From IMG/VR virus record IMGVR_UViG_3300023257_000007, positions 284,223 through 348,222 of that record: a stretch of 64,000 nucleotides of DNA; one strand, 5' to 3'. A program made the position numbers and the translations under genes. Positions 36,188 through 62,962 of this stretch are shown here, in pieces. The number at the start of each line of letters is the position of its first letter. Position 1 is the stretch's first letter. The notes beneath the pieces were generated by a model that was not told the origin of the DNA, made no database searches, and was given only the letters and a program-made list of their open reading frames with translations.

Positions 36188-39100
36188 CTAATTTTTAATT
36201 ATTTTTTTTGTAAATATGTTATCTCCTGAAGTTAATACAATCATATACATTGCAGGAGGCAATTTTGATAAATCTATTGATGATATTTCTGCATTTTGAT
36301 ACTCATATTCCATTATTATTTGTCCATAATGATTGAATAGTTCTACATTTATTTTGTCTGTTTTATCAAAGTTTTCAAGATATATATAAATAATATCTCT
36401 AAATGGGTTAGGATAAATCACAACAGATTGATTTGCCGTTGTTTGATTACAAGAAGCCTGAATAAAATTGTAAGTTTTCGAAGTTCCGTCATAATCAACT
36501 TGAGTGAGTCTGTAATAGTTAATCCCGTCTGAGAAATTTGGATCTTTGAAGATGTAGTTTAATAAATTATTAGAATTTCCATTACCATCAATTTTTCCAA
36601 TCTGATCAAAATCCTTTGCGTTTGACGATCTTTCGATAGTGAAATAATCGTTATTTATTTCGCTAGCAGTTGTCCACTGAATATCTATGTTTCCATTATT
36701 GCAATCGGCTTCAAATTTCACAAGATTAACAGGCAAAGGATTTTCGTTACTCTTTGATCCGAAAGTAATTATTTTATTTGACTTTGCTCCAAAAGTAACA
36801 GGAAAACGAGATCTTATAAAGCCTGCATCGTGTGTAAAGCTTGTCAATAGAGGATCACTGTTGAAATCAATATTTGCCCACATAGAACCATTCCAATAGG
36901 CTACAAGTAAATCACTGGCAACAAAATCACCTGAAATCCCATCGTCAAAACCATGAACACAGATGGCGTCGTCAACATGAGTATTGTCGAACCAATATAG
37001 AGTTACAGGCATATCTTGGTCAGAATTAACTACCCAATTTTCTCTATTGCTGACATGATGCAAATTAAGGTCCATATTTCCGCCATGTTCCCACCAATCT
37101 GGCATGTAGGTATTTGAGAAATTATACTGAGCAGTAACAGTAACAGTTGATGCTCCTGTTGGATGTATTCCTAATGCTCCTGCAATGGCATATTCTACAG
37201 ATCCGTTGCCATCAAAATCTTGGATGCTAACATCACCTGTTGGGAAAATAAATTCATTTATCCCAGTTTTAGTAATCATTCCATCAACAAAACTATTGTT
37301 TGAAGAAACATTTGCTGTTGCTGAATTTATAAATGTAAGTGAACCTCCACCAGAATAATAAACAATACCATGGGTAAATGTTGCAGTTCCTTCTATTGTC
37401 ATAGGTGAAGTTATTTCAATATCAGCATGATTACCAAACGAGTTATCAAATAATATATTATTAAAATTACCTACACCTGCATTAATAGTCTGTAATCCAC
37501 TACCGTTAAATGCAACTGTTCCATTTCCGGCATTAAATGTTCCAGAGTTATTCCAATCACCTGTTACTTCTAATGATGACAATCCGCCCAAAGTCAATCC
37601 TGTGCCGATATTCATATCTTCGCAATAAACTGTGGAACTTGCTGTAGTTACAGCATTTGTAGTTGCACAAGTTCCAGCGTCGTAAGATTGAATAAATACA
37701 TTGCTGGTTGCAGAAGGTAATAGAGTTGCAACAGAGTATAGTGTGCCGTTATAATATAACCAGTTTGTAACATCGTCCCAACTATTACCGTTTGCTCCAG
37801 TCCAAAAGTAGTCGCCAGTGCCAATACCACCAGGTGTAGGTGCTGTTGTAACTGTTACTACCCAGCTTCCACCTGCCACTTCGAAACCTGTGTTACAAGT
37901 TCCATCATGTGCCCAACGTCTATAAGTTGTAGTTACTGTTAATCCTCCAGGAGGGTTGTAACTTGCAGAAGTCGCACCAGAAATATCTACTCCGTTAGCT
38001 TGCCATTTATATGTGATAGTATTATCACCACCGCTTGCTACAGCAGTAGAGCTAATATTTGCAGGATCTGTTCCCTGACAGATTGTTTCGCCTGTAGATA
38101 GAATTGTTCCAGCTGTGAAATCTGGTCGAACTGTAACAGTCCATGTTCCTGTTGCAGTTTCACCAGAACAGTTGTTGTTACTGTTAACCGTCATGGTGAG
38201 GGTAACTGTGTTTCCGGCATCACCTGCTGCTGGAGTGTAAGTTGGTGTTAATGTTGTTGCTCCGGATGTGATTGAACCTGCACCGTCTTCTGTCCAAGCA
38301 ATCGTACCGTTAGAAGCACTTGCTCCACTGACTGTCGCAGTTTCATTAACACAAATGTCCTGCGATCCGCCAGCCGAAGCTGTTGGTAATGGATCAACAT
38401 TCACGGTGTATGTTGCTGTTGCTATTTGAGGTGTACAAGCATTATCACTTGTTACAGTCATTGTAAGAGTAATTGTTCCACTGGCATCACCAGCAGCTGG
38501 AGTGTAAGTTGGTGTTAATGTTGTTGCTCCCGATGTGATAGAACCTGCACCGTTTTCTGTCCAAGCAATCGTACCGTTAGAAGCACTTGCTCCACTGACT
38601 GTCGCAGTTTCATTAACACAAATGTCCTGCGATCCGCCAGCCGAAGCTGTTGGTAATGGATCGACATTCACGGCTACATTATCACTTACTCCGCAACCAC
38701 TGGCTGTGGCTGTCATGGTGTAAGTTGTTGTTGATGATGGAGTTGCTACTGGATTTAAAATATTTGGATTACTTAAACCAGTAGTAGGAGACCAAGAGCA
38801 GGTTGGTTGTGCTTGTACGTTATAATGAACGATTCCATTAAACGCTCTAGGTGAACATACACTTGAAAATTGACCACATAATCCAATACCAGCTGTTAAT
38901 GTTAAATAAGAATCTGAATATGTTGTGTTTGCTGTAAGGGTAGTATATTTAGCATTGAAGTTAACATATATACCATAAGTCTGATTTGCCGGTATTATAA
39001 GATTGGCAATATCAAGATAATATTGAGTGCTTGTAACACCATTAATAGAATATGTCCCTAAAAGAATCCAAGAACCACTTGTTGTTTCACTACCTACATA

Positions 39101-41023
39101 GCTTCCCGATTTATAATATACATTAACGGTTTGGGTAGCAGTACTACCAGGTAAAATTGTAAATGCATCAATTTCAATAGGATTTGCACCAGTTGTTAAA
39201 TCAAACATATTTCCTCCACCACATCCATTACCTGCTGCAAAAGTAGTTGTTAAACTACAACTAACAGTACTAAGATTAGCACTTCCACTCAATTGCGAAC
39301 TCGACCCATTACAAATTGTCACATCACTTCCGGCCGAAACTCCTGTTGGTAAAGGATTTACTGTAACTGCCACACTTGCAGCAGCACTCCATGCTCCATC
39401 GCCGGTTCGGTACGATCTAATGTAATACGTTCCTGATGTTGTTACATTATATGTTGAGCCACTGCTTGTCGTAGATGTTCCACTGGCAGAGGTTTGCCAA
39501 TACCATGTTTCTCCAGAAGGAGGTGTGCCGTTTGCGGTGATTGTTACACTGCCGCAACCTGGAGAGTTTGAAGTTGGTGTGTTTGGGGTAATAGGTAGAA
39601 TAACGGCAACGGCAACAATACAAGTATAATCTTCCGTTTCACCATAAGTAAGTGCAGCACATGGATCGGTAGGCGTAGTAGTTCCATAATAATCTGAACG
39701 TATACGCATTTTGTGTGAACCCAGTGTAGCACCAACCGGAATTGTAAAACTTGTGTTTACGGCCGTAGTATTAGAAGGATTAACATAAGTAAGAACCTTC
39801 TCACCTGCGGAAAATGTCAGATCATCATTAAAATCAATCCACACAACATGATCCATACCATAACTCTGAGTGGTGAGACTCAAATTAACAACACCTCCTT
39901 GTACCTGCGATACAGAATAGGTGCCACTATAATCGGTATAAGAGGTTGATGAACAACCTGAGGTACTATTAAAGTTGGTCAGCCCACCTGATGTGGTAAC
40001 ATTTGTTATCCACATATAATTGCAAGGATAAGAAGAAACAATCGGGCTGCAGGGTGGAGCTACAGCTTCTATAATCTCTATATCATCAATAGACATATCG
40101 CTTGTGTATGATGTAGATGTAAGCCCTCTAAAACGCAATTGAACACTACTGTTACCAGCATATGTGCTAAGATCTACATTCGCAGTATGCCATGAGTTAC
40201 CTTGGTCGCCACTTAGGCTCCATACGGTATTCCATGTACCACAATTGTCACCGGATGCTTCAAGATACAATGTTCCCATAACTGCACCGTACATATGGTA
40301 TTGAAAGCTCATATCTATTCCCCCCATAGACGAGAAATCGAGACATGGTCCATACATTGTTGCTGTTTTATTGGAATAATTTGGTGTAGATGATTCCGTG
40401 TACATGTAGTAGCTACCTTCTGCTGCTGCGCTTGGTCCGGTACCGCCTGAGCTAGTGCCTCCGGTTTGTCTTGTCCAATCGAAATCATCCCCGGGTCTAT
40501 TCTCCCAATATCCCATTCCTGTTTCAAATCCTTCTGAGTAAGGAAATGTGCTTACTATTGCAGGGCATGAGCAGGGTGGTGCTCCACCACTAGAAACAAA
40601 TGTAATCGTAGTGGTAACGCAACCAGTATTCGTTCCACAAGATGAATTTGTATTCCAATGTGCATAATATGTTCCTGAACTTGTCGCAGTCCATTGTAAA
40701 GGACTGGTTCCGTGAGCAACCACAGCTCCATTATATGAGCCAGATCTGATTGTAACATATCCTCCCGTACTAATTGCACAACTGTATGTAGTTCCTGAAA
40801 CTACACTATTTATTGTACTATACTCTGTTTGAAAACTACATGTGCTAAAAGTTTCACTTCCAGATGTAGGTGCAGTTGCACTTCCATAAGAAGAAGAATT
40901 TGTACATTGAGCTTGCACCTTGTTAATTGTAAATAACATGCTTATTGCCAATAAAAGCACATAAATCCCTTTGATATTCGATAACTTATTCAGCAATACT
41001 GAAAATGTATAATTTTCTTTCAT
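36188..41023 (-). CDS. T9SS cargo adhesin-like protein (MAM, GEVED, Ig-like repeats, type A CTD)
   Basis: Signal peptide; MAM (DFDW...GP..A.EG.YYMY.E...YHMYG); GETEDY; LPV.L..F.A..W.TASE.NND.F.IERS; IYPNPF...L....Y.I...TKKIIK; visibly higher GC than flanks. Confidence 0.9.
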   Translation of the reverse strand: MKENYTFSVLLNKLSNIKGIYVLLLAISMLFTINKVQAQCTNSSSYGSATAPTSGSETFSTCSFQTEYSTINSVVSGTTYSCAISTGGYVTIRSGSYNGAVVAHGTSPLQWTATSSGTYYAHWNTNSSCGTNTGCVTTTITFVSSGGAPPCSCPAIVSTFPYSEGFETGMGYWENRPGDDFDWTRQTGGTSSGGTGPSAAAEGSYYMYTESSTPNYSNKTATMYGPCLDFSSMGGIDMSFQYHMYGAVMGTLYLEASGDNCGTWNTVWSLSGDQGNSWHTANVDLSTYAGNSSVQLRFRGLTSTSYTSDMSIDDIEIIEAVAPPCSPIVSSYPCNYMWITNVTTSGGLTNFNSTSGCSSTSYTDYSGTYSVSQVQGGVVNLSLTTQSYGMDHVVWIDFNDDLTFSAGEKVLTYVNPSNTTAVNTSFTIPVGATLGSHKMRIRSDYYGTTTPTDPCAALTYGETEDYTCIVAVAVILPITPNTPTSNSPGCGSVTITANGTPPSGETWYWQTSASGTSTTSSGSTYNVTTSGTYYIRSYRTGDGAWSAAASVAVTVNPLPTGVSAGSDVTICNGSSSQLSGSANLSTVSCSLTTTFAAGNGCGGGNMFDLTTGANPIEIDAFTILPGSTATQTVNVYYKSGSYVGSETTSGSWILLGTYSINGVTSTQYYLDIANLIIPANQTYGIYVNFNAKYTTLTANTTYSDSYLTLTAGIGLCGQFSSVCSPRAFNGIVHYNVQAQPTCSWSPTTGLSNPNILNPVATPSSTTTYTMTATASGCGVSDNVAVNVDPLPTASAGGSQDICVNETATVSGASASNGTIAWTENGAGSITSGATTLTPTYTPAAGDASGTITLTMTVTSDNACTPQIATATYTVNVDPLPTASAGGSQDICVNETATVSGASASNGTIAWTEDGAGSITSGATTLTPTYTPAAGDAGNTVTLTMTVNSNNNCSGETATGTWTVTVRPDFTAGTILSTGETICQGTDPANISSTAVASGGDNTITYKWQANGVDISGATSASYNPPGGLTVTTTYRRWAHDGTCNTGFEVAGGSWVVTVTTAPTPGGIGTGDYFWTGANGNSWDDVTNWLYYNGTLYSVATLLPSATSNVFIQSYDAGTCATTNAVTTASSTVYCEDMNIGTGLTLGGLSSLEVTGDWNNSGTFNAGNGTVAFNGSGLQTINAGVGNFNNILFDNSFGNHADIEITSPMTIEGTATFTHGIVYYSGGGSLTFINSATANVSSNNSFVDGMITKTGINEFIFPTGDVSIQDFDGNGSVEYAIAGALGIHPTGASTVTVTAQYNFSNTYMPDWWEHGGNMDLNLHHVSNRENWVVNSDQDMPVTLYWFDNTHVDDAICVHGFDDGISGDFVASDLLVAYWNGSMWANIDFNSDPLLTSFTHDAGFIRSRFPVTFGAKSNKIITFGSKSNENPLPVNLVKFEADCNNGNIDIQWTTASEINNDYFTIERSSNAKDFDQIGKIDGNGNSNNLLNYIFKDPNFSDGINYYRLTQVDYDGTSKTYNFIQASCNQTTANQSVVIYPNPFRDIIYIYLENFDKTDKINVELFNHYGQIIMEYEYQNAEISSIDLSKLPPAMYMIVLTSGDNIFTKKIIKN
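38228..38674. repeat. near-identical internal direct repeat, 267-bp period
   Basis: DPLPTASAGGSQDICVNETATVSG...TPAAGDA occurs twice. Confidence 0.85.
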
Positions 41024-42428: not shown

Positions 42429-43865
42429 TTACATCTTATCAATCAATATACGCTTTCCAAATGTTAAATTACTAGGATCATCATTATGGGAAACAATCCA
42501 AATTACTCTATTGCTGAAAGTACTGTAGCGTCTTCTGTCAGGACAATCCCCAAGAGCATCTGTAAAATATATCATAAATGCTGGTTGCAGTCCCTTCTTT
42601 ACCAAGTTATCCTGAATCCAGTCAAACGGGGGAGTAAATCTTGTTCCACCGAAACCTTGAGGTCTTAATTTATCAATTTTAAATTTATTTCTTGTACTAA
42701 ATTCTTGTACACCACAAATATCATAATCACACCATATAACATGACATTTTTTAATACCTCTATTCTTAAAAATAGCATGTATTTCAGATGCAAACTTATC
42801 TAAATCATCTTCACTAATAGATCCAGATGTATCAATAGCAATAACAACGTTATTGTAATCTGATTTTTTCTTATTTAATCCCCATAAATAATCACCTCTA
42901 CTAATAGCACGTCTCTGTGGTAGTTTATGTTTTAATTTACTATAAATATTAGCAACAAATTTTCTTAATTCTGCTTGCCAATTTACTTTAGGTTTTGAGA
43001 TTTTTCTTAAAAATCTCTGCATATTAGCACTACCGAAACCTTGATTCTTAGATGAAGCATCTCTTACGATTTCACCCCATACTTGTTTCATTTTTTCATC
43101 ATTTCCTTTAGCGCCTTGTAATTCTTTGTTTCCTGATTGTCCAGCAGTTCCACCACCTTGTCCAGGTTTTCCTTTTCCTTTTCCTTTTCCTTGTCCGTTT
43201 CCTTCGCCTTCGCCTTCTCCTTCACATTCTCCTTCACATTCTCCATCATCATAAATATCAATACCACCACTTAATGAACCAGGGGCTTGAATATCAGAAC
43301 CAAGACCATCCATAAGTTGTTTAATAAGTTCTTTCTTTTTTTGTTTGTTTTTTTCCCATTCTGGTTCTAATTCAGCATAAATTTGTTCAGTACTCCAATC
43401 TTTATATTTTTCTTCATAAAGAACTTTCTCTGGCATTTTACCAATACCTTCTAATAATAGGTTAATAGCATAATCACCTGAAATATTCCATAATTCAGGA
43501 TCTCTGCCTAAACCTCTATCAAAATGGAATAATGCATTATGCATAATTTCATGACATAGAACAAATACACATTCTTCTTCACTTAATTCATTAGCAAAGT
43601 CACTATTATACATGATTGATAAACCATCAGTTGCCATAGTTGTAATTCTAGGGTCTGTGGCTTGTTTAATTTTAAGATTAAATAATAAATCAGCAAAGAA
43701 ACCGTAGTTTGCTACGATAACCATAATACATTTTCTTATCTTTTTCCAAGCTCTATCATCTAATTTTTTCTTCTTATCATCTGATTTTTTTTGCTTATCT
43801 TCTTCTTTATCTTCTTTTCCTTCAACAATAGAAGCAAATTTGCAATATCGTTCTAATTTTCCCAT
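42429..43865 (-). CDS. metallopeptidase-like plus VWA domain protein (DUF2201-like)
   Basis: TMATDG, HEIMH, D.AIN, Gly-rich linker, MIDAS DTSGS, GGT.F, FTD. Confidence 0.88.
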   Translation of the reverse strand: MGKLERYCKFASIVEGKEDKEEDKQKKSDDKKKKLDDRAWKKIRKCIMVIVANYGFFADLLFNLKIKQATDPRITTMATDGLSIMYNSDFANELSEEECVFVLCHEIMHNALFHFDRGLGRDPELWNISGDYAINLLLEGIGKMPEKVLYEEKYKDWSTEQIYAELEPEWEKNKQKKKELIKQLMDGLGSDIQAPGSLSGGIDIYDDGECEGECEGEGEGEGNGQGKGKGKGKPGQGGGTAGQSGNKELQGAKGNDEKMKQVWGEIVRDASSKNQGFGSANMQRFLRKISKPKVNWQAELRKFVANIYSKLKHKLPQRRAISRGDYLWGLNKKKSDYNNVVIAIDTSGSISEDDLDKFASEIHAIFKNRGIKKCHVIWCDYDICGVQEFSTRNKFKIDKLRPQGFGGTRFTPPFDWIQDNLVKKGLQPAFMIYFTDALGDCPDRRRYSTFSNRVIWIVSHNDDPSNLTFGKRILIDKM

Positions 43866-43930
43866 ATTTTTAGTTTTATTTTCTTAAAGATATATATTAT
43901 TTTTTAAAATTAAAAATGTTCAAAATAATA

Positions 43931-44230
43931 TTATTTAGTTACTTTATCTACTAATTTATTTTTTTCTTCTTGATTTAAGTTAGCAAGAATTTCATCATAT
44001 TCATCACTCCACATCTTAATAATTTTCATCATCAATTCATTACCATCTTTTTCAAATGAATTTAAAGATTTTAATATTTTTTTAATTTCTTTAGTTGAAC
44101 CAACAAAATCATTATTTTGAAATATATCAATAACTTTATCTTTTATAATTTCTTCTTTTGAATAAAGACCCATATCAGAAAATGTTTTTTCCTGTTGTGT
44201 GAATTCTTCAAATAATTTTACTTTTTTCAT
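43931..44230 (-). CDS. hypothetical protein with leader
   Basis: Starts MKKVKLFEEF. Confidence 0.7.
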   Translation of the reverse strand: MKKVKLFEEFTQQEKTFSDMGLYSKEEIIKDKVIDIFQNNDFVGSTKEIKKILKSLNSFEKDGNELMMKIIKMWSDEYDEILANLNQEEKNKLVDKVTK

Positions 44231-44240
44231 AATTTATATA

Positions 44241-44269
44241 AAAAAAGCCTGTTTAACAGGCTTTTTTTT
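44241..44269. terminator. intrinsic terminator hairpin
   Basis: aaaaaagcctgtttaacaggctttttttt. Confidence 0.7.
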
Positions 44270-44291
44270 AAATATCTAATTTTTACTTCTA

Positions 44292-45806
44292 TTATGGATT
44301 TAAAATGTCAGCAAATTTGTTATACCATTTCTTAATTGAAGGTACCCAAATTTTCTTCCAAGGATCATCAGTTGTTACATAAGCATGTGTCTTTTTAACA
44401 TATTGTAGTAACGATGTTGCAACTTCCATATTCTCAATTCTTCTTGCATATGTAATTAAATTTTCAAGTTCCTTTGCAGTTAATTTCTCACCTTTTTTAG
44501 CCATACCAATAGCAGCAGTTACCGCTCTAGATCTATCGATTCTTTTTGGTGGCATAGGAGCTTCTTCTGGTTTCTTGTATACAAGAGCAATATCTTTTGG
44601 TGGAAATACTGCCAATAAATCAAGATATTCTGCAAACTGAACAGCTGCAGTATTACCAACATGAGAATTAAATAACTTTTTAATTGCTTCTTTAGATAAC
44701 TGATTTCCTGATGCTTCTTTAGCTTCTGTATATTCTAATGATGCACTTGCCCAAGAACGTGGAGATGGCCAGTTAGGAGTTTCTTTATCAGGATCTAAAT
44801 GATGAAGTATGTCTTTATTGAAATCAATATAACCAATTACGTCAGGATCCATATAATCTTGTTTAATAGCCCATGTCACCCATTCATCTTTTGTTGTAAT
44901 AAGATTATAGTGAGTAAAACGGTTAGCTAGAGCAGTACCTAAATCAGTTACTGTTGGTTCTTCTTCACGTCTATTACCAGCAGCAATAATTAACCATTTA
45001 TCAGGTAATTTATATTCACCAACTTGACCATCAAGACATAGTTGAAGTGAAGCTGATAATACATGCTCATTAGCACGGTTCAATTCATCAAAAAACATAA
45101 TACCACCTTTTCCATTTTCACCATTATCACTAGGGAAAATCTTAGGTAATCTAAATGTCGTTCTTCTTGAAGTGTCTCCTTCAACTTTTACACCAGCAGC
45201 ATCTTTAGTATCTCTACCTTTAACAACTTCAATTTCTGGAAGGCCAATAAAATCAGTAGGCTCAATTGTTGCTAAATGCCATACTAAACAATCAACTTGA
45301 AGTTCTTTGGCTGTTGCATTAATAACATCTGTTTTACCAATACCTGGAGCACCCCAAATAAATGTAGAAAACATTTTATTTGGATATTTTGTCTTCATTT
45401 TAAACTTACGAACAAGAATATTACTCATTTCTGAAGGAACATAATTACCTACTTCTGGATTAGGATGCTCTAAAGGCACCTTATCCTCGTTCATAGCTAA
45501 TTTTGCATCTTCAATTGATAATTCTTCTGTTTCTTCTTCTTCAGAAAGATTATCAATTTCTTTTTCTATTCCTGATATTTTACTTTCATCTGGTTTACTA
45601 CCATATGGAAAAATATCTACTTTACCTTCTAATGCGCCTTTCTTCTTCAAGAAGAGAGCATAATATAACCAAGCAGCTTTTTTAAATTTCTTTTCAAAGA
45701 AATCCCATACTTTGTCGACCATACCACTTATCCAATTTTCGTTAAGTTCGCTATCGTACATGTGCTTTTCGTTTAAAAAGTTCTTGTAATTTACTAATTT
45801 TTTCAT
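44292..45806 (-). CDS. MoxR/dynein-related AAA+ ATPase with leader
   Basis: GAPGIGKT, FFDELNRA, AAGNR, ALANRF, PSPRSW; starts MKKLVNYKNFLNE. Confidence 0.9.
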   Translation of the reverse strand: MKKLVNYKNFLNEKHMYDSELNENWISGMVDKVWDFFEKKFKKAAWLYYALFLKKKGALEGKVDIFPYGSKPDESKISGIEKEIDNLSEEEETEELSIEDAKLAMNEDKVPLEHPNPEVGNYVPSEMSNILVRKFKMKTKYPNKMFSTFIWGAPGIGKTDVINATAKELQVDCLVWHLATIEPTDFIGLPEIEVVKGRDTKDAAGVKVEGDTSRRTTFRLPKIFPSDNGENGKGGIMFFDELNRANEHVLSASLQLCLDGQVGEYKLPDKWLIIAAGNRREEEPTVTDLGTALANRFTHYNLITTKDEWVTWAIKQDYMDPDVIGYIDFNKDILHHLDPDKETPNWPSPRSWASASLEYTEAKEASGNQLSKEAIKKLFNSHVGNTAAVQFAEYLDLLAVFPPKDIALVYKKPEEAPMPPKRIDRSRAVTAAIGMAKKGEKLTAKELENLITYARRIENMEVATSLLQYVKKTHAYVTTDDPWKKIWVPSIKKWYNKFADILNP

Positions 45807-56425: not shown

Positions 56426-57145
56426 ATGAAAATTAGAAACGGATTTGTAAGTAACAGTTCTTCTAGTAGTTTTATTATACATGGTGTAAAAATTACAAAC
56501 AAAGAAGACATTGAAAAATTAACTAAATTATCTTGGCCTGAACAAAGTGAACTTGGTCTTGAATTAGAAGAAGATAGATATTTCTTTGGTGGTAATGATA
56601 AAGATAACGATTATATAGTTGGTTTAAATGGTGGTAATCTTGAAGATGGTGTCATCGCTGAAATTAAACCATTAACTGAATCAAATAAAGAAAAATTGGT
56701 TAAAATATTAAAAACATTAGATATTAAGATAAATATTGATAATATTAAAACATATGCTCAATATATAAGCAATGATAATTATTAAACAATAAATTATAAA
56801 AATATGAAAATAAGAAACGGATTTGTAAGCAACTCAAGTAGCAGTAGCTTCATGATTGAAAATAAAACAGATAAAGATTTAACATTAGTGGATTTTATAA
56901 CTGAACAACCTAATTTAATACAAGAATATGTAGATGAATATGATAGAGATGATCCTGAATACACTCAAGAAAATCTTTTAATCTCAGCAAAATTAAATAA
57001 TGTTACATTTAAAGCAAAGACAGAAGAAGCTTATACTTTTGGTGATGATGATGGAACATTAATTGGTAAGATACTTGATTATATGTTAAGAGATAATTGG
57101 GAAACAGAAAGTTTCAAGTGGAAATTTCATAGTTCAAATAGATAA
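56426..57145 (+). other. tandem pair of MKIRNGFVSNSSSSSF-family proteins (56426-56785, 56804-57145)
   Basis: Identical first 16 aa with synonymous differences; divergent bodies. Confidence 0.85.
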
Positions 57146-57833: not shown

Positions 57834-58376
57834 ATGATTAGAGGATTTGAAATTGTTTCTGATGAACACAGAAAACATGAAAATGTACAACTACCATTAA
57901 GGGGTAGTGAAGATTCAGCTGGATATGATTTTTATTCAAATGAAACACATATAATAGAACCAGGTGATCAAAAAGTTTTTTGGACTGATATCAAAGCTTA
58001 CATGCAAAAAGGTGAAGTTCTTAAAATATATGTTAGAAGTTCGATTGGTATTAAAAAAGGACTTAGATTAGCAAATCAAACTGGGGTAATTGATTGTGTT
58101 CCAAAAGGAACTAAAATTAAAATTAAAGATGGTGAAATAAATGTTGAAGATTTATTGGACAAAAAAAAAATTATTATATCTTATAATGAAGAAGAAGATG
58201 AAATAGAAGAAGATGAATTAAAAGAAATATGGATCGTAGATGATCTGGAATTATTAGAAATTGAGACAGAAGAAGGTGACTCAATTAAAATACCCTTTGA
58301 AAAAGAGGTATATACTGAAAGAGGATGGATTAAAGCAAAAAATCTAACTCTTGATGATAAAATATTAACATATTAA
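57834..58376 (+). CDS. dut: dUTPase N-terminal part (87 aa) fused to split intein N-fragment (93 aa)
   Basis: AGYD, RSS, GVID followed by intein block A CVPKGTKI (Cys1 at 58095) and TERGW.KA..L...D.I. Confidence 0.92.
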   Translation: MIRGFEIVSDEHRKHENVQLPLRGSEDSAGYDFYSNETHIIEPGDQKVFWTDIKAYMQKGEVLKIYVRSSIGIKKGLRLANQTGVIDCVPKGTKIKIKDGEINVEDLLDKKKIIISYNEEEDEIEEDELKEIWIVDDLELLEIETEEGDSIKIPFEKEVYTERGWIKAKNLTLDDKILTY

Positions 58377-58640
58377 ATGGAAAACAAAAAATTAAATAAT
58401 CTAACAAATGCAGCTAATGATTATAATAAAGGTTTAAACGATTGTGCAATAGTCGATATTAATTCAAATTTAGATTTAATTGAAAAAATTGAATTAGATA
58501 AAAGTATTAAAGAATCTTTAATACATGCACACAAAAGATTAATAGACATTTTAAATGGTGAAATAGACTTGAATGAAGAAGATTATTTGATCTATATTTC
58601 ATATATACAAGAAATAATTGCAGATTATAGATTAAATTAA
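58377..58640 (+). CDS. hypothetical helical protein inside the fractured dut locus
   Basis: 87-aa ORF starting directly after the IntN stop. Confidence 0.7.
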   Translation: MENKKLNNLTNAANDYNKGLNDCAIVDINSNLDLIEKIELDKSIKESLIHAHKRLIDILNGEIDLNEEDYLIYISYIQEIIADYRLN

Positions 58641-58701
58641 AAAATTAACATAATTCCAGTATTAATGTTTAATATATATTATTAAATAAATAATTTTAAC
58701 G

Positions 58702-59748
58702 ATGGAAATATTATGTAAAAATTGTGGTAAATCTTTTAAAGTTGCCAACTGGCAAATTAAAAAAGGAACAAAATATTGTTCTCATGAGTGTTATTGGGAA
58801 GATAAAAGAGGCGGTAAGAAAAAAGAAGAAAAGGTATGTATAGAATGTGGTGAGAAATTCTTACAAGAAACTTGGGAAAGTAAAAGAAAATTTTGTTCTC
58901 ATGAATGTTACTGGAAAAATAAAAAAAAACTAAAAGATATTGATTGTTTGAATTGTGGTAAAACATTTGAGCCATATAATTTAAAAACAAAATTTTGTTC
59001 TAAAAAATGTTCAGGTGAATATATAAGAAAACAAAACAATAAAATCTGTATTCAATGTGGAAAAGAATATCATCCATTAATTAAAACTTCTCAATATTGT
59101 AGTAGAGAATGTTATTGGAATTATAGAAGAGAAAACAAAGGTGTAATAATACAAACGAATCAAGGTGATTTTAGAACAAAATTAATATGTAATAATTGTG
59201 GAAAAGAATATTTAGAACATAAATATAGATTAAAAGTTTCTAAGTTTTGCTCAATGAAATGTCATTTTGAATCTAAGAGATTAAAGAAAAAATGTCCAAC
59301 ATGTGAAAAATATTTTGAAGTTCCAAATCACTTAGCACATCGAATTTTTTGTAGTAAAGATTGTGTAGATTTTACAAATAAATCTAAAAAAGAAAATGAC
59401 TTTTATAAATTTGTTAACAACATAATAAATGTAGAACAAAATAAAAAGGTTATATATGACAAAGTTTATTTTCCAGATTTAATGAATGAAGAAAACAAAA
59501 TAATAATTGAATTTTTTGGCGATTATTGGCATTGCAATCCTAATTTCTATGAAGATGAATATTATAATTCAAAAACAAGAAAACATGCACACGAAATGTG
59601 GAGCGATGATCAATTAAGATTAGAAAAATTAGAAGGATTAGGATATGATGTTAATATTATTTGGGAAAATGAATGGGAAACTGATTTAGAATTAGTTAAA
59701 ACAAAAATATTAAAAATAAAAGATAAATATGAAATACGTAAAAATTAA
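58702..59748 (+). CDS. free-standing homing endonuclease (CxxC...[F/Y]CSxxC repeats plus Vsr-like domain)
   Basis: About six Zn-finger repeats; PDL...IIEFFGDYWH...D..R...LGY....WE. Confidence 0.85.
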   Translation: MEILCKNCGKSFKVANWQIKKGTKYCSHECYWEDKRGGKKKEEKVCIECGEKFLQETWESKRKFCSHECYWKNKKKLKDIDCLNCGKTFEPYNLKTKFCSKKCSGEYIRKQNNKICIQCGKEYHPLIKTSQYCSRECYWNYRRENKGVIIQTNQGDFRTKLICNNCGKEYLEHKYRLKVSKFCSMKCHFESKRLKKKCPTCEKYFEVPNHLAHRIFCSKDCVDFTNKSKKENDFYKFVNNIINVEQNKKVIYDKVYFPDLMNEENKIIIEFFGDYWHCNPNFYEDEYYNSKTRKHAHEMWSDDQLRLEKLEGLGYDVNIIWENEWETDLELVKTKILKIKDKYEIRKN

Positions 59749-60028
59749 AAGAATAGAAAAATGTGAATCAGAACCGATTTATCATTTAACAATTAAAAAT
59801 AATCACAATTTTTTTGGTAATAATTTATTGTTACACAACTGCGATTATTTTGGAAATTCCAAAAATGACGGAAATATTGGTGCTTGTTTATGGAACCCAA
59901 CAAACGAACCAATTACTATTAAAAAAGGTGAAAGAATAGTTCAAGGTATATTTGAATTGTTCTTAGAATCTGATAACTGTAACACCAAAAAAGAAAGAGA
60001 CGGTGGAATCGGTTCAACAAATAAATAA
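59729..60028 (+). CDS. dut: split intein C-fragment (37 aa) fused to dUTPase C-terminal part (62 aa)
   Basis: ...HNFFGNNLLLHN|CDY, then KGERIVQGIF and R.GG.GST (dUTPase motifs 4 and 5). Confidence 0.92.
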   Translation: MKYVKIKRIEKCESEPIYHLTIKNNHNFFGNNLLLHNCDYFGNSKNDGNIGACLWNPTNEPITIKKGERIVQGIFELFLESDNCNTKKERDGGIGSTNK

Positions 60029-61363: not shown

Positions 61364-61759
61364 ATGAAAAAACAAGAAATTCCACTTCAGTTGAAGATAC
61401 AAGTACCAAAACCTGAAGGTTTAAACAAAAAACAATTAAAAAAACAATTACAAGAACTACAATTTGAATATGATTCTCTTTTTGATAAATTTTACACTAA
61501 AATAGAGATTATATTCACATATTCAAAAGATAATTATTGCCATTTTGAAAAATTAGAGATTGATGAAAATATATTTGCATTTTTAATAAATGTTAAAGAT
61601 ATAACTAGACAACAAGCAGAACAACGATGTTGGGAAGTAATGAAGAATTATGAAAAATATGATGATTGTTTAATAATTTGGTTGCCATCTGTTATAGAAG
61701 AAGACAAAATTGTAAAACTTACAAACACCACAAAAAATATAGAACTATGTCATGATTAA
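61364..61759 (+). CDS. hypothetical protein
   Basis: 131-aa ORF overlapping the next gene. Confidence 0.7.
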   Translation: MKKQEIPLQLKIQVPKPEGLNKKQLKKQLQELQFEYDSLFDKFYTKIEIIFTYSKDNYCHFEKLEIDENIFAFLINVKDITRQQAEQRCWEVMKNYEKYDDCLIIWLPSVIEEDKIVKLTNTTKNIELCHD

Positions 61760-62651
61760 GAAAATAAAAGCAGTGACTAAAGATTATGTAAAAGAACATA
61801 AAGATCTTTATGATAAAGGTTTACCTAATAAATATATGGAATTATTCCATCAAAAAATTGAAGGTGTTAGAAAGGCAAAAATTGTGTATGGTTTTAGTCA
61901 AGCTGAAATGATTGAATATAGTAAATGTCAAAATGATATAATATATTTTATTGAAAAATATTGTTCAATATTAACACCTGATGGTATTGTTAAACCTAGA
62001 TTATATGATTATCAAAAAACAATGTTAGAAAATTATACAAATAACAGATTTAGCTTAAATATGATAAGTAGACAGATGGGTATTTCAAATATCATTGCAT
62101 GGTTTACTTTACATATGTTAACTTTCAATGAAAGCAAAAATGCAATATTCATGGATATAAAATCAGGGTACTGTAAAAGTTTATTAGAAAAAGTTAAAAC
62201 ATCATATAAAATGTTACCTTTCTTTCTTCAAAAAGGTGTCATAACATGGAACCAAAGATCTATAGTTTTAGAAGATTATAGTCGTATTACTACACAATCC
62301 TATTCTAAAGAACCGGTGATTAGCTCTGATATTCACTTATTATATATGGATAATTACTCTAGAACTACAACATCAGAAACATCATACAAATATTTATTAC
62401 CAACAATCACATCTACAAATGATTCTAGAATAATAATATCAGGTAAACCTAAAGGTTTTAACCACTTTATTAAACTACTTCATAATAGTGAATTACCTTC
62501 AAACCATCCAGACAAAAATATATTTGAATCTTTAAGAGTATATTGGTGGCAACATCCAAATAAAAATGAAGAATGGAAGAAACAGGAAATAGAAAATATT
62601 GGTCAACAAATGTTTGATCAAGAGTATGATTTAAAATTTACAAATAAATAG
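61752..62651 (+). CDS. T4 gp17-like terminase ATPase-domain paralog, catalytically degenerate, no nuclease domain
   Basis: KC..D..YFIE.YC, LYDYQ, SRQMGIS, LLYMDN, W.QHP...W, F.QEY...F. Confidence 0.75.
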   Translation: MIKKIKAVTKDYVKEHKDLYDKGLPNKYMELFHQKIEGVRKAKIVYGFSQAEMIEYSKCQNDIIYFIEKYCSILTPDGIVKPRLYDYQKTMLENYTNNRFSLNMISRQMGISNIIAWFTLHMLTFNESKNAIFMDIKSGYCKSLLEKVKTSYKMLPFFLQKGVITWNQRSIVLEDYSRITTQSYSKEPVISSDIHLLYMDNYSRTTTSETSYKYLLPTITSTNDSRIIISGKPKGFNHFIKLLHNSELPSNHPDKNIFESLRVYWWQHPNKNEEWKKQEIENIGQQMFDQEYDLKFTNK

Positions 62652-62678: not shown

Positions 62679-62962
62679 ATGAACTACACATTAGCTAAAG
62701 ACTAATGTGTTTCAGGTTTCATAGACTCATCTAATGACAACGCCTCCACCTGTTTTTGTTTAATGTCCGACTCAATCCCTGAACCAGACAATATTTTTAA
62801 TCCTTGTTTTAATATGTTTTTAGCTGCATTAAAATCTCTATCATGATTGGTTTCACATGATGGACAAGTCCATTCTCTATCTTTTAATGTTAAATTTTGG
62901 TTTATCCAACCACAATTAGAACACATTTTACTTGATGGAAAAAATCTATCAATTTTTACATA
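62679..62962 (-). mobile_element. tnpB: IS200/IS605 remnant: TnpB C-terminal fragment plus intact right end
   Basis: [17 protein letters not shown]...WTCPSC...[11 protein letters not shown]; hairpin acacattag/ctaatgtgt (62686-62710) ending GTAGTTCAT. Confidence 0.8.

What the first reader, a model, noticed from the sequence alone, without database searches (positions are those of the whole stretch)
58095..59839. Split intein with non-canonical catalytic residues (no block B TxxH; His at block F position 4)
Seen: the block B position reads SIKIPFEKEVYTERGW, with PFEK where TxxH is normal. Block F reads IYHLTI where VYDLxV is normal. Cys1, the penultimate His, terminal Asn and Cys+1 are intact. 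Established: block B His and block F Asp assist the N-terminal acyl shift and branching. Inference: the paired changes may be compensatory, implying an alternative mechanism and a possibly orthogonal split intein for protein engineering.
Basis: partly seen in the sequence, partly recalled or inferred. Interest (0 to 1): 0.65.

Follow-up and report, generated by a model that had tools for sequence, protein, structure and literature searches.

The report
Split dUTPase intein lacking catalytic histidine
A phage dUTPase gene is cut in two by a split intein with a homing-endonuclease gene between the halves, and this intein, like about 45 sequence clusters of uncultivated-virus relatives, has Lys in place of the block B His (called the most conserved intein residue) and His in place of the usual block F Asp, yet is evolving under purifying selection.

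Summary
Window 57834-58376 encodes a dUTPase N-extein (87 aa) plus a 93-aa IntN. Window 59729-60028 encodes a 37-aa IntC plus Cys+1 and the dUTPase C-extein. An 87-aa ORF and a 348-aa zinc-ribbon/Vsr-like endonuclease ORF lie between, which is the 'fractured gene' layout of Dassa 2009.

Profile alignments to solved inteins put Pro67 on block B Thr (B:7), Lys70 on block B His (B:10) and IntC His19 on block F Asp (F:4). IntN contains no histidine at all, so no alignment can restore TxxH.

Both changes are fixed across one well-supported clade: Lys in 45/45 rows of the tree (representative clusters plus close relatives) and F:4 His in about 43 of 46 C-halves, Tyr in the rest. Cys1, His-Asn and Cys+1 are invariant and dN/dS is about 0.05-0.3, so this is not decay.

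Other dUTPase-hosted inteins at the same site carry Gln, Thr, Ser or Glu at B:10 (one keeps His) and keep Asp at F:4.

The Lys/His pairing is therefore clade-specific and co-conserved, but it has a single origin, so compensation is plausible and unproven. It is most likely an active class-1-like split intein with a variant catalytic set. No dUTPase-hosted or Lys-B:10 intein was found in the searched literature.

The parts
57834..58094 (+). dUTPase N-extein (87 aa), ending in motif III ...GVID
   Evidence: Pfam dUTPase 1.9e-8, PHROG 135 2.6e-25. NCBIfam PRK13956 profile positions 3-86 of 147.
58095..58376 (+). IntN, 93 aa (Cys1 to Tyr93) plus TAA stop. Strongly acidic (28 D/E against 14 K/R), no His.
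   Evidence: Profile hits to solved DnaB, NrdJ-1 and DnaX inteins. Predicted to bind IntC.
58293..58304 (+). Block B core PFEK: Pro67 (58293-58295) at B:7 and Lys70 (58302-58304) at B:10, in place of TxxH
   Evidence: HMM alignments. Lys invariant and Pro at least 90% conserved. 45/45 Lys in the clade.
58377..58640 (+). 87-aa ORF of unknown function that starts at the base after the IntN stop. Absent from all related loci examined.
   Evidence: No Pfam, PHROG or NCBIfam hit. Related loci go straight from the N-half to the endonuclease ORF.
58702..59748 (+). Free-standing putative homing endonuclease, 348 aa: repeated CxxC...CSxxC zinc ribbons plus a C-terminal Vsr/DUF559-like nuclease (E..GDYWHCNP...W..D...WE). 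Its last 20 bp overlap the IntC start.
   Evidence: 11 of 12 homologs hit PF18741, 5 of 12 hit DUF559. The layout matches Dassa 2009 (PMC2677866).
59729..59839 (+). IntC, 37 aa (Met1 to Asn37), basic N-terminus
   Evidence: Pfam Intein_splicing 3.2e-6. Profile hits to BIL2, Aes123 PolB1, Spl DnaX and gp41-1.
59783..59785 (+). His19 of IntC (CAT) at block F position 4, where Asp is usual
   Evidence: Alignment to 9HTH (His on Asp). Conserved as His, rarely Tyr, in the family.
59834..59842 (+). Penultimate His36, terminal Asn37 and Cys+1
   Evidence: Invariant in 17/17 aligned members and in all C-halves seen.
59840..60028 (+). dUTPase C-extein (62 aa plus stop), starting CDYFGNS...
   Evidence: NCBIfam PRK13956 profile positions 84-146 of 147. 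Uninterrupted relatives read GIID-x-DY... with a variable x where Cys+1 sits.

Best explanation
This is an active, naturally split, class-1-type intein in a 'fractured' phage dUTPase gene. The two dUTPase halves are translated separately. The acidic IntN and the basic IntC associate into a HINT fold. Cys1, Cys+1 and Asn37 carry out the usual four-step splicing and rebuild dUTPase motif III with Cys at a naturally variable position. The intervening Vsr-like endonuclease is the mobility module.

The catalytic helpers differ from the textbook set. The invariant Lys70 at B:10 most likely replaces the His electrostatically. It would polarise the scissile carbonyl and stabilise the tetrahedral thiazolidine oxyanion, as proposed for Lys58 of the His-less Tko CDC21-1 intein. 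His19 of IntC at F:4 would take over the proton-shuttle role (deprotonating Cys1 and Cys+1, protonating the leaving amine) that His B:10 and Asp F:4 normally share.

Shown: the anatomy, the residue equivalences, the clade-wide conservation, purifying selection, the predicted HINT fold and the predicted binding of the halves. Inferred: splicing activity and the specific chemical roles of Lys70 and His19.
For: - Anatomy and family hits.
- The exteins abut on the dUTPase profile (positions 3-86 and 84-146 of 147), and uninterrupted homologs show that nothing is missing.
- Residue equivalence to solved inteins.
- Invariant C1, K70, G77-W78 and H36-N37-C+1. Cys+1 sits where intein-free dUTPases have S, A, Q, K, M or R, so its invariance points to selection for splicing chemistry.
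- The intein halves are as conserved as the exteins or more so, with dN/dS 0.05-0.30.
- The same N-half / endonuclease / C-half layout occurs in all 11 IMG/VR loci. One relative lost the endonuclease but kept both halves (L016).
- A natural contiguous version exists, with a cluster member on 14 contigs (P0223). It folds as a HINT domain: pLDDT 86.9, TM about 0.8 to BIL2, DnaB, gp41-1 and NrdJ-1 inteins.
- Predicted IntN-IntC complex: ipSAE 0.72, best of 3 controls 0.00, run agreement at least 95%, partner pLDDT at least 74. That mark was reached by 51 of 78 solved complexes and 2 of 108 mismatched pairs. Lys70 (ORF residue 157) lies in the interface.
- Charge complementarity: IntN net -14, IntC N-terminus +4.
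- Literature: Thr B:7, His B:10 and Asp F:4 all sit next to the N-terminal scissile bond. Tko CDC21-1 uses a Lys in the absence of His B:10 (PMC4031507).
Against: - No splicing was measured.
- No model coordinates were available to me, so no Lys70-to-carbonyl or His19-to-Cys1 distance was checked.
- The complex pass may reflect resemblance to solved split inteins rather than this pair's own binding.
- The Lys/His pair has one evolutionary origin, so co-conservation cannot be told apart from shared descent.
- Sister inteins do without B:10 His while keeping F:4 Asp. Something else common to dUTPase-hosted inteins may therefore be the real compensator.
- Three clade members have Tyr at F:4 with Lys retained, so His19 is not strictly required.
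- dS is near saturation, so the dN/dS values are approximate.
Confidence: 0.55

Rival explanations
1. The two substitutions are not a compensating pair. The block B His became dispensable once, early in the dUTPase-hosted intein lineage, because of some shared feature. Candidates are the fixed Asp at -1 from dUTPase motif III and a lineage-specific conserved residue such as Asp40 of IntN. After that, B:10 drifted to Lys, Gln, Thr, Ser or Glu in different clades. F:4 His is an unrelated clade-specific change.
For: Among the top 150 representatives, at least 48 of the 49 recognised dUTPase-hosted N-inteins lack His at B:10: PxxK 31 (plus 7 more on fragments my extein test did not flag), S/AxxK 4, TxxQ 8, TxxT 3, TxxE 1, against TxxH 1. 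One more dUTPase-hosted member, P0240, is TxxS. By contrast 151 of about 165 non-dUTPase HINT domains keep His. All five non-Lys dUTPase inteins with a recovered C-part keep F:4 Asp. BIL2 combines F:4 His with a canonical block B. Asp40 is invariant in the Lys clade and present in most of the sister-clade members aligned.
Against: Lys at B:10 is invariant over 45 diverged rows, which is stronger conservation than drift predicts. The F:4 state tracks the B:10 state perfectly at clade level. A role for the -1 Asp is my own speculation, and a literature search gave no support. The single TxxH member has the same -1 Asp.
Confidence: 0.28
2. The intein is splicing-dead. The halves persist only as a non-covalent dimerisation module that holds the two dUTPase fragments together, or the locus is a dead gene carried along by the homing endonuclease.
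For: Two or three of the normally essential helper residues are missing. Phage dUTPases are often dispensable (general knowledge). Fragmented phage enzymes can assemble without splicing (PMC3045599, listed).
Against: Cys1, Asn37 and Cys+1 are invariant, although Cys+1 occupies a variable extein position. Both exteins and both intein halves show pN far below pS. There are no frameshifts or stops in about 80 homologs. A contiguous relative exists in which association cannot be the only role. The halves are retained where the endonuclease has been lost.
Confidence: 0.1
3. His at F:4, with the penultimate His36 and the two Cys nucleophiles, forms a metal (Zn) site that gates splicing, as in Tetrahymena BIL2. 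There an F-block His binds Zn and Zn repositions the catalytic residue.
For: The best sequence and fold matches of the C-part and of the whole domain are BIL2 (6Y75/6TMM), which shares IYH...NHNFF. The CASP14 account describes Zn bound by His125 and a second His, and activation of His69 (PMC8616854).
Against: BIL2 has the block B His that Zn acts on, and this family has none. I could not map BIL2 His125 onto F:4 with certainty from the chain numbering. Some members have Tyr at F:4. Zn normally inhibits inteins (PMC8616854).
Confidence: 0.07

Closest known systems
Fractured genes with naturally split inteins and free-standing Vsr-like homing endonucleases (Dassa et al. 2009; gp41-1, NrdJ-1, IMPDH-1 and others)
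   Same: N-half, endonuclease ORF and C-half lie on one strand. The endonuclease 3' end overlaps the IntC start (20 bp here, 6-69 bp there). IntN is 93 aa and IntC 37 aa (their ranges are 88-105 and 33-54). The setting is phage or metagenome DNA. The endonuclease is Vsr/DUF559-like with zinc-binding repeats.
   Different: dUTPase is not among their eight host enzymes. Their inteins have canonical block B: NrdJ-1 reads TPDH in the alignment. This locus carries an extra 87-aa ORF.
Thermococcus kodakaraensis CDC21-1 intein orthologs (Tori et al. 2012)
   Same: Natural, active inteins without the block B His. A Lys is proposed to stabilise the tetrahedral intermediate (PMC4031507, PMC6333167).
   Different: There the Lys (Lys58) lies outside the conserved motifs, and here Lys sits at B:10 itself. 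Those are contiguous archaeal inteins in CDC21. No F:4 His is reported for them in what I could read. The primary paper was not available.
Tetrahymena thermophila BIL2 (BUBL) HINT domain, PDB 6Y75/6TMM
   Same: It is the best sequence match of the C-part (E 8e-7) and the best fold match (TM about 0.78). It shares His at F:4 and the NHNFF motif.
   Different: BIL2 keeps a canonical block B (TVNH). It is eukaryotic, contiguous, flanked by ubiquitin-like domains, and forms isopeptide bonds (PMC8616854).
PolB16 OarG cysteine-less split intein (Pasch et al. 2023)
   Same: A split intein in which the block B (N3:10) His is dispensable for splicing (PMC10189870).
   Different: There the His is still present, and a separate 'motif NX' His near Ser1 is critical. 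It uses Ser1/Ser+1 and is atypically split (15 + 168 aa). Here IntN has no His at all, so there is no NX His.
Class 3 inteins (WCT; mycobacteriophage Bethlehem DnaB type)
   Same: The block F position 4 residue is non-Asp and catalytically central.
   Different: Class 3 inteins lack the residue-1 nucleophile and have Cys at F:4. Here Cys1 is invariant and F:4 is His.

Membership tests
Class 1 intein (HINT splicing domain) | Cys or Ser nucleophile at intein position 1 | tested here: met
   TGT at 58095, invariant in 22/22.
Class 1 intein (HINT splicing domain) | Block B Thr(B:7)-x-x-His(B:10) | tested here: not met
   Pro67 and Lys70 align to Thr and His of three solved inteins. IntN has no His.
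Class 1 intein (HINT splicing domain) | Block F position 4 Asp (common but not universal) | tested here: not met
   His19 aligns to the Asp of 9HTH.
Class 1 intein (HINT splicing domain) | Block G His-Asn followed by a Cys, Ser or Thr +1 nucleophile | tested here: met
   H36-N37-C+1, invariant.
Class 1 intein (HINT splicing domain) | HINT fold | tested here: met
   AF2 model of the contiguous clade member P0223:87-236 has pLDDT 86.9. Foldseek TM is 0.74-0.80 to many solved inteins. The window's own halves were not folded as one chain.
Class 1 intein (HINT splicing domain) | In-frame insertion at a conserved site of a host protein, leaving it complete after excision | tested here: met
   Insertion in dUTPase motif III. 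The exteins cover profile positions 3-86 and 84-146 of 147. The joined sequence was not built.
Class 1 intein (HINT splicing domain) | Demonstrated protein splicing | not testable with these tools
   Needs expression and an assay.
Naturally split intein in a fractured gene (Dassa 2009) | Two separate ORFs carry extein plus intein halves, with a free-standing endonuclease ORF between them | tested here: met
   The same layout occurs in 11 IMG/VR loci and several metagenome contigs.
Naturally split intein in a fractured gene (Dassa 2009) | The halves associate (charge complementarity, predicted complex) | tested here: met
   Net charge -14 against a basic IntC N-terminus. ipSAE 0.72 against a best control of 0.00. 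This is a prediction only.
Class 3 intein | No residue-1 nucleophile; Cys at F:4; Trp B:12 and Thr G:5 (WCT) | tested here: not met
   Cys1 is present, F:4 is His and G:5 is Leu.
Tko CDC21-1-type His-less inteins | Lacks His B:10 and uses a compensating Lys outside the conserved blocks, in CDC21/MCM | tested here: not met
   His B:10 is absent, as in that family. But the Lys is at B:10 itself, the host is dUTPase, and the nearest fold and sequence neighbours are BIL2 and DnaB-type inteins. PabCDC21-1 ranks 37th.
Bacterial/eukaryotic intein-like (BIL) domains | HINT domain in a non-conserved, variable protein context, often without a +1 nucleophile | tested here: not met
   Precise insertion in a conserved enzyme motif with an invariant Cys+1, even though BIL2 and the C. 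thermocellum BIL are the top fold hits.
Vsr-like (DUF559 / PD-(D/E)xK-related) homing endonuclease | Vsr/DUF559-type nuclease core with conserved acidic, WH and Asp residues | tested here: inconclusive
   11 of 12 homologs hit PF18741 (best 6.6e-6) and 5 of 12 hit DUF559, all below the curated cut-offs for the window's copy. Invariant E270, G273, H277, D303 and E322. No Vsr hit in PDB sequence searches.

The most novel reading that the evidence does not exclude
dUTPase-hosted phage inteins are a large natural group that performs the N-S acyl shift without the 'universal' block B histidine. The window's clade uses a Lys(B:10)/His(F:4) dyad contributed by the two different halves. This would be a distinct catalytic solution within class 1 chemistry. 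It could give a mechanistically different and possibly orthogonal split intein, perhaps with a different pH or metal response.
Probability: 0.35. Interest if true: 0.75.

Novelty: new variant of a known kind. Interest (0 to 1): 0.6.

Why it matters
[quoted passage not shown] This window belongs to a clade with Lys at that position in all 45 rows of my tree (clusters at 50% identity plus close relatives). Sister clades carry Gln, Thr, Ser or Glu. All are in one host enzyme and all are under purifying selection.

If they splice, the accepted requirement for His B:10 is much softer than thought. [quoted passage not shown]

In practice the pair is small (93 + 37 aa) and typically split. A contiguous natural version also exists. 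That makes it an easy candidate for the split-intein toolbox.

If it does not splice, it would be a rare example of intein halves retained purely as an assembly module.

Tried and rejected
- A block B His hidden by misalignment: rejected, because IntN has no His. Two apparent 'PxxR' and 'PxxP' hits in other proteins (P0239, P0287) were one-residue alignment shifts of ordinary TPLH and TPEH. I did not count them as variants.
- Class 3 mechanism: rejected (Cys1 present, F:4 not Cys).
- Decay or pseudogene: rejected on conservation and dN/dS.
- Alignment A4 (full-length halves against the contiguous protein) was poor. It was replaced by the trimmed alignment A5.
- Fetching sister-clade loci from IMG/VR failed twice. 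I used exact-protein look-ups instead. Several of those contigs ended before the C-half (L017, L019, L021, L024).
- PDB sequence searches with the endonuclease, alone and as a profile, found only zinc-finger look-alikes and no Vsr.
- The primary Tko CDC21-1 paper is not held. The CDC21-1 structure paper says nothing on block B.
- A literature search for a -1 Asp effect (anhydride or N-cleavage) returned nothing usable. That idea stays as speculation from memory.
- Model coordinates are not exposed to scripts, so no active-site distances were measured.
- No match to IntN in 50,697 GenBank phage records. The contiguous intein finds only distant helicase and terminase inteins there.
- No other intein was found in the 88-kb record.
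- I did not build, search or fold the joined (spliced) dUTPase. Each extein was handled by reference on its own.
Full report
**What is there**

The window is part of an 88,478-bp IMG/VR virus record. CheckV estimates it at about 32% complete, and the same locus lies on a 348-kb viral contig. GC is about 24%.

On the + strand, ORF 57834-58376 (180 aa) starts as a dUTPase (Pfam 1.9e-8; PHROG 135 2.6e-25; NCBIfam PRK13956 positions 3-86 of 147). At residue 88 it switches to an intein N-terminal region.

ORF 59729-60028 (99 aa) starts with an intein C-terminal region (Pfam Intein_splicing 3.2e-6). It continues from residue 38 as the rest of the dUTPase (PRK13956 positions 84-146).

The break is inside dUTPase motif III. 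Uninterrupted relatives read GIID-x-DY, with S, A, Q, K, M, R or C at x, and here x is the Cys+1. I did not build or search the joined extein sequence. Each part was handled by reference.

Two ORFs lie between the halves:
- An 87-aa ORF with no family (58377-58640).
- A 348-aa ORF (58702-59748) made of repeated zinc ribbons plus a C-terminal Vsr/DUF559-like nuclease. Its last 20 bp overlap the IntC start.

This is the 'fractured gene' arrangement described for metagenomic phage genes by Dassa et al. 2009. That includes the endonuclease/IntC overlap and the half sizes of 93 and 37 aa. dUTPase is not among their eight host enzymes.

**The observation**

A 22-member profile of the N-part aligns to the solved Ssp DnaB, NrdJ-1 and Spl DnaX inteins. 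The family's Pro falls on the block B Thr and its Lys on the block B His. IntN has no histidine at all, so no alignment can supply a block B His.

The C-part profile aligns His19 to the Asp of VYDIEV in the Aes123 PolB1 intein. His26 (HNF), His36, Asn37 and Cys+1 are canonical.

**Is it decay?**

No.
- Word and profile searches found dozens of N-halves and C-halves from metagenomes at 36-81% identity, with no frameshifts or stops.
- Lys70, Cys1 and Gly77-Trp78 are invariant, and Pro67 is at least 90% conserved.
- His36-Asn37-Cys+1 are invariant.
- F:4 is His in about 43 of 46 C-halves and Tyr in three.
- Nei-Gojobori dN/dS is 0.10-0.30 for IntN and 0.05-0.23 for IntC. That is no higher than for the exteins, and the intein halves are often more conserved than the dUTPase parts. 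dS is near saturation, so the ratios are rough, but pN is far below pS throughout.
- The N-half / endonuclease / C-half layout recurs in all 11 IMG/VR loci.
- One relative has lost the endonuclease but kept both halves about 310 bp apart (L016).
- One clade member is a natural contiguous mini-intein in a 284-aa dUTPase, and a member of its cluster is seen on 14 contigs (P0223).

**Fold and association**

The contiguous relative, modelled with an alignment of N- and C-halves, gives pLDDT 86.9 and pTM 0.78. It matches solved HINT domains at TM 0.74-0.80. The top matches are Tetrahymena BIL2, a C. thermocellum BIL, and the DnaB, gp41-1, DnaX and NrdJ-1 inteins.

The window's own IntN (with 5 extein residues) and IntC (with 8) are predicted to bind:
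- ipSAE 0.72 against a best of 3 controls of 0.00.
- The runs agree in at least 95% of contacts, and the partner pLDDT is at least 74.
- The mark was reached by 51 of 78 solved complexes and 2 of 108 mismatched pairs.

Because split-intein complexes have been solved, this pass shows likeness rather than proof of binding. IntN is strongly acidic (28 D/E against 14 K/R) and the IntC N-terminus is basic, as in other split inteins.

**The wider picture**

An exhaustive profile search gave 2827 hits at E ≤ 1e-3, and I analysed the best 150.

| N-intein group (top 150 hits) | Residues at B:7/B:10 |
|---|---|
| dUTPase-hosted | PxxK 31 (plus 7 on fragments), S/AxxK 4, TxxQ 8, TxxT 3, TxxS 1, TxxE 1, TxxH 1 |
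| HINT domains in other proteins | T/S/AxxH in 151 of about 165 |

A quick maximum-likelihood tree (95 columns, block B columns not removed) gave three results:
- All 45 Lys-bearing rows sit on one branch (SH-aLRT 97).
- A sister group (support 92) holds dUTPase inteins with Gln, Glu, Thr or His.
- A separate dUTPase-hosted Thr/Ser clade has support 96.

I recovered the C-part for five non-Lys members. They are one contiguous TxxQ protein and loci L018 (TxxT), L020 (TxxE), L023 and L025 (both TxxQ). In every one F:4 is Asp.

So Lys at B:10 and His at F:4 co-occur perfectly at clade level, but they arose once. Loss of the block B His is a general trait of dUTPase-hosted inteins, not only of this clade.

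**Mechanism**

Established knowledge places Thr B:7, His B:10 and Asp F:4 around the N-terminal scissile bond. His B:10 polarises the bond and shuttles protons. Asp F:4 tunes the Cys1 and Cys+1 thiols (PMC4031507).

The one characterised natural His-less group, Tko CDC21-1, uses a Lys. That Lys lies elsewhere in the sequence and is thought to stabilise the tetrahedral intermediate. PolB16 OarG shows that the His can be dispensable when another His sits near residue 1.

By analogy I propose two roles here. Lys70 supplies the positive charge at the oxyanion and scissile carbonyl. His19 of IntC supplies the general acid/base. This is inference, because I had no coordinates with which to check distances.

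The rivals are:
- Independent changes, permitted by some shared dUTPase-context feature.
- A splicing-dead assembly module.
- A BIL2-like metal gate.

**Novelty**

Reviews from 2014 and 2018 state that only Tko CDC21-1 orthologs and one pseudogene lack His B:10, and that F:4 is Asp, then Cys, then Trp. No paper in the searchable library combines 'split intein' with dUTPase. The 22 papers that mention both intein and dUTPase describe no dUTPase-hosted intein in those I opened. No GenBank phage record carries this IntN.

Subscription journals and curated intein databases were not searchable, so prior description cannot be excluded.

I rate it a new variant of a known kind: a fractured-gene split intein with a non-canonical, conserved catalytic set in a new host enzyme.

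Noticed in passing
window 58377-58640 (+): An 87-aa ORF starts at the base after the IntN stop codon and lies between IntN and the endonuclease. It has no family hit, and it is absent from every related fractured-dUTPase locus examined. It may be an extra passenger of the mobile element.
   Followed up: partly
L012:45-599 and 1557-1856; also P0034, P0199: In a few relatives the same intein sits one residue further along dUTPase motif III (...GVIDN | intein | C-YRGD instead of ...GVID | intein | C-G-YRGE). The same intein clade also occupies two dUTPase subtypes, with C-exteins starting CDY(F/Y)xN... or C(G/S)YRGE....
   Followed up: partly
L016:1814-3041: A 71%-identical relative has the N-half and C-half separated by only about 310 bp, with a 61-aa ORF and no endonuclease. 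The homing endonuclease has been lost while both intein halves stay intact.
   Followed up: partly
L020:2200-2469: A sister-clade dUTPase split intein with TxxE at block B has Ser, not Cys, at +1, and an unusually short called C-half.
   Followed up: no
window 61752-62651 (+) and 62702-62926 (-): The terminase large-subunit ORF covers only the N-terminal ATPase domain (Terminase_6N positions 3-201 of 215). It is followed on the opposite strand by a 74-aa remnant of a TnpB/Cas12f-like protein (TNB domain, 2.8e-11). No terminase nuclease domain was seen in the remaining 1.1 kb of the window, so the gene may be interrupted.
   Followed up: partly
window 36188-41023 (-): A 1611-aa ORF carries MAM and GEVED domains and a C-terminal type IX secretion sorting domain (Por_Secre_tail, 2.6e-12). 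It lies in a stretch of 38% GC against about 24% elsewhere. This hints at a Bacteroidota host and at recent acquisition from it.
   Followed up: partly
window 56426-56785 and 56804-57145 (+): Two adjacent ORFs share the same N-terminus (MKIRNGFVSNSSSSSF...). They look like a tandem duplication of a gene of unknown function. A similar motif occurs in an ORF of the related locus L007.
   Followed up: no
window 42429-45806 (-): A DUF2201 metallopeptidase/VWA-like protein lies next to an AAA_5 (MoxR-like) ATPase. No function is assigned here.
   Followed up: no
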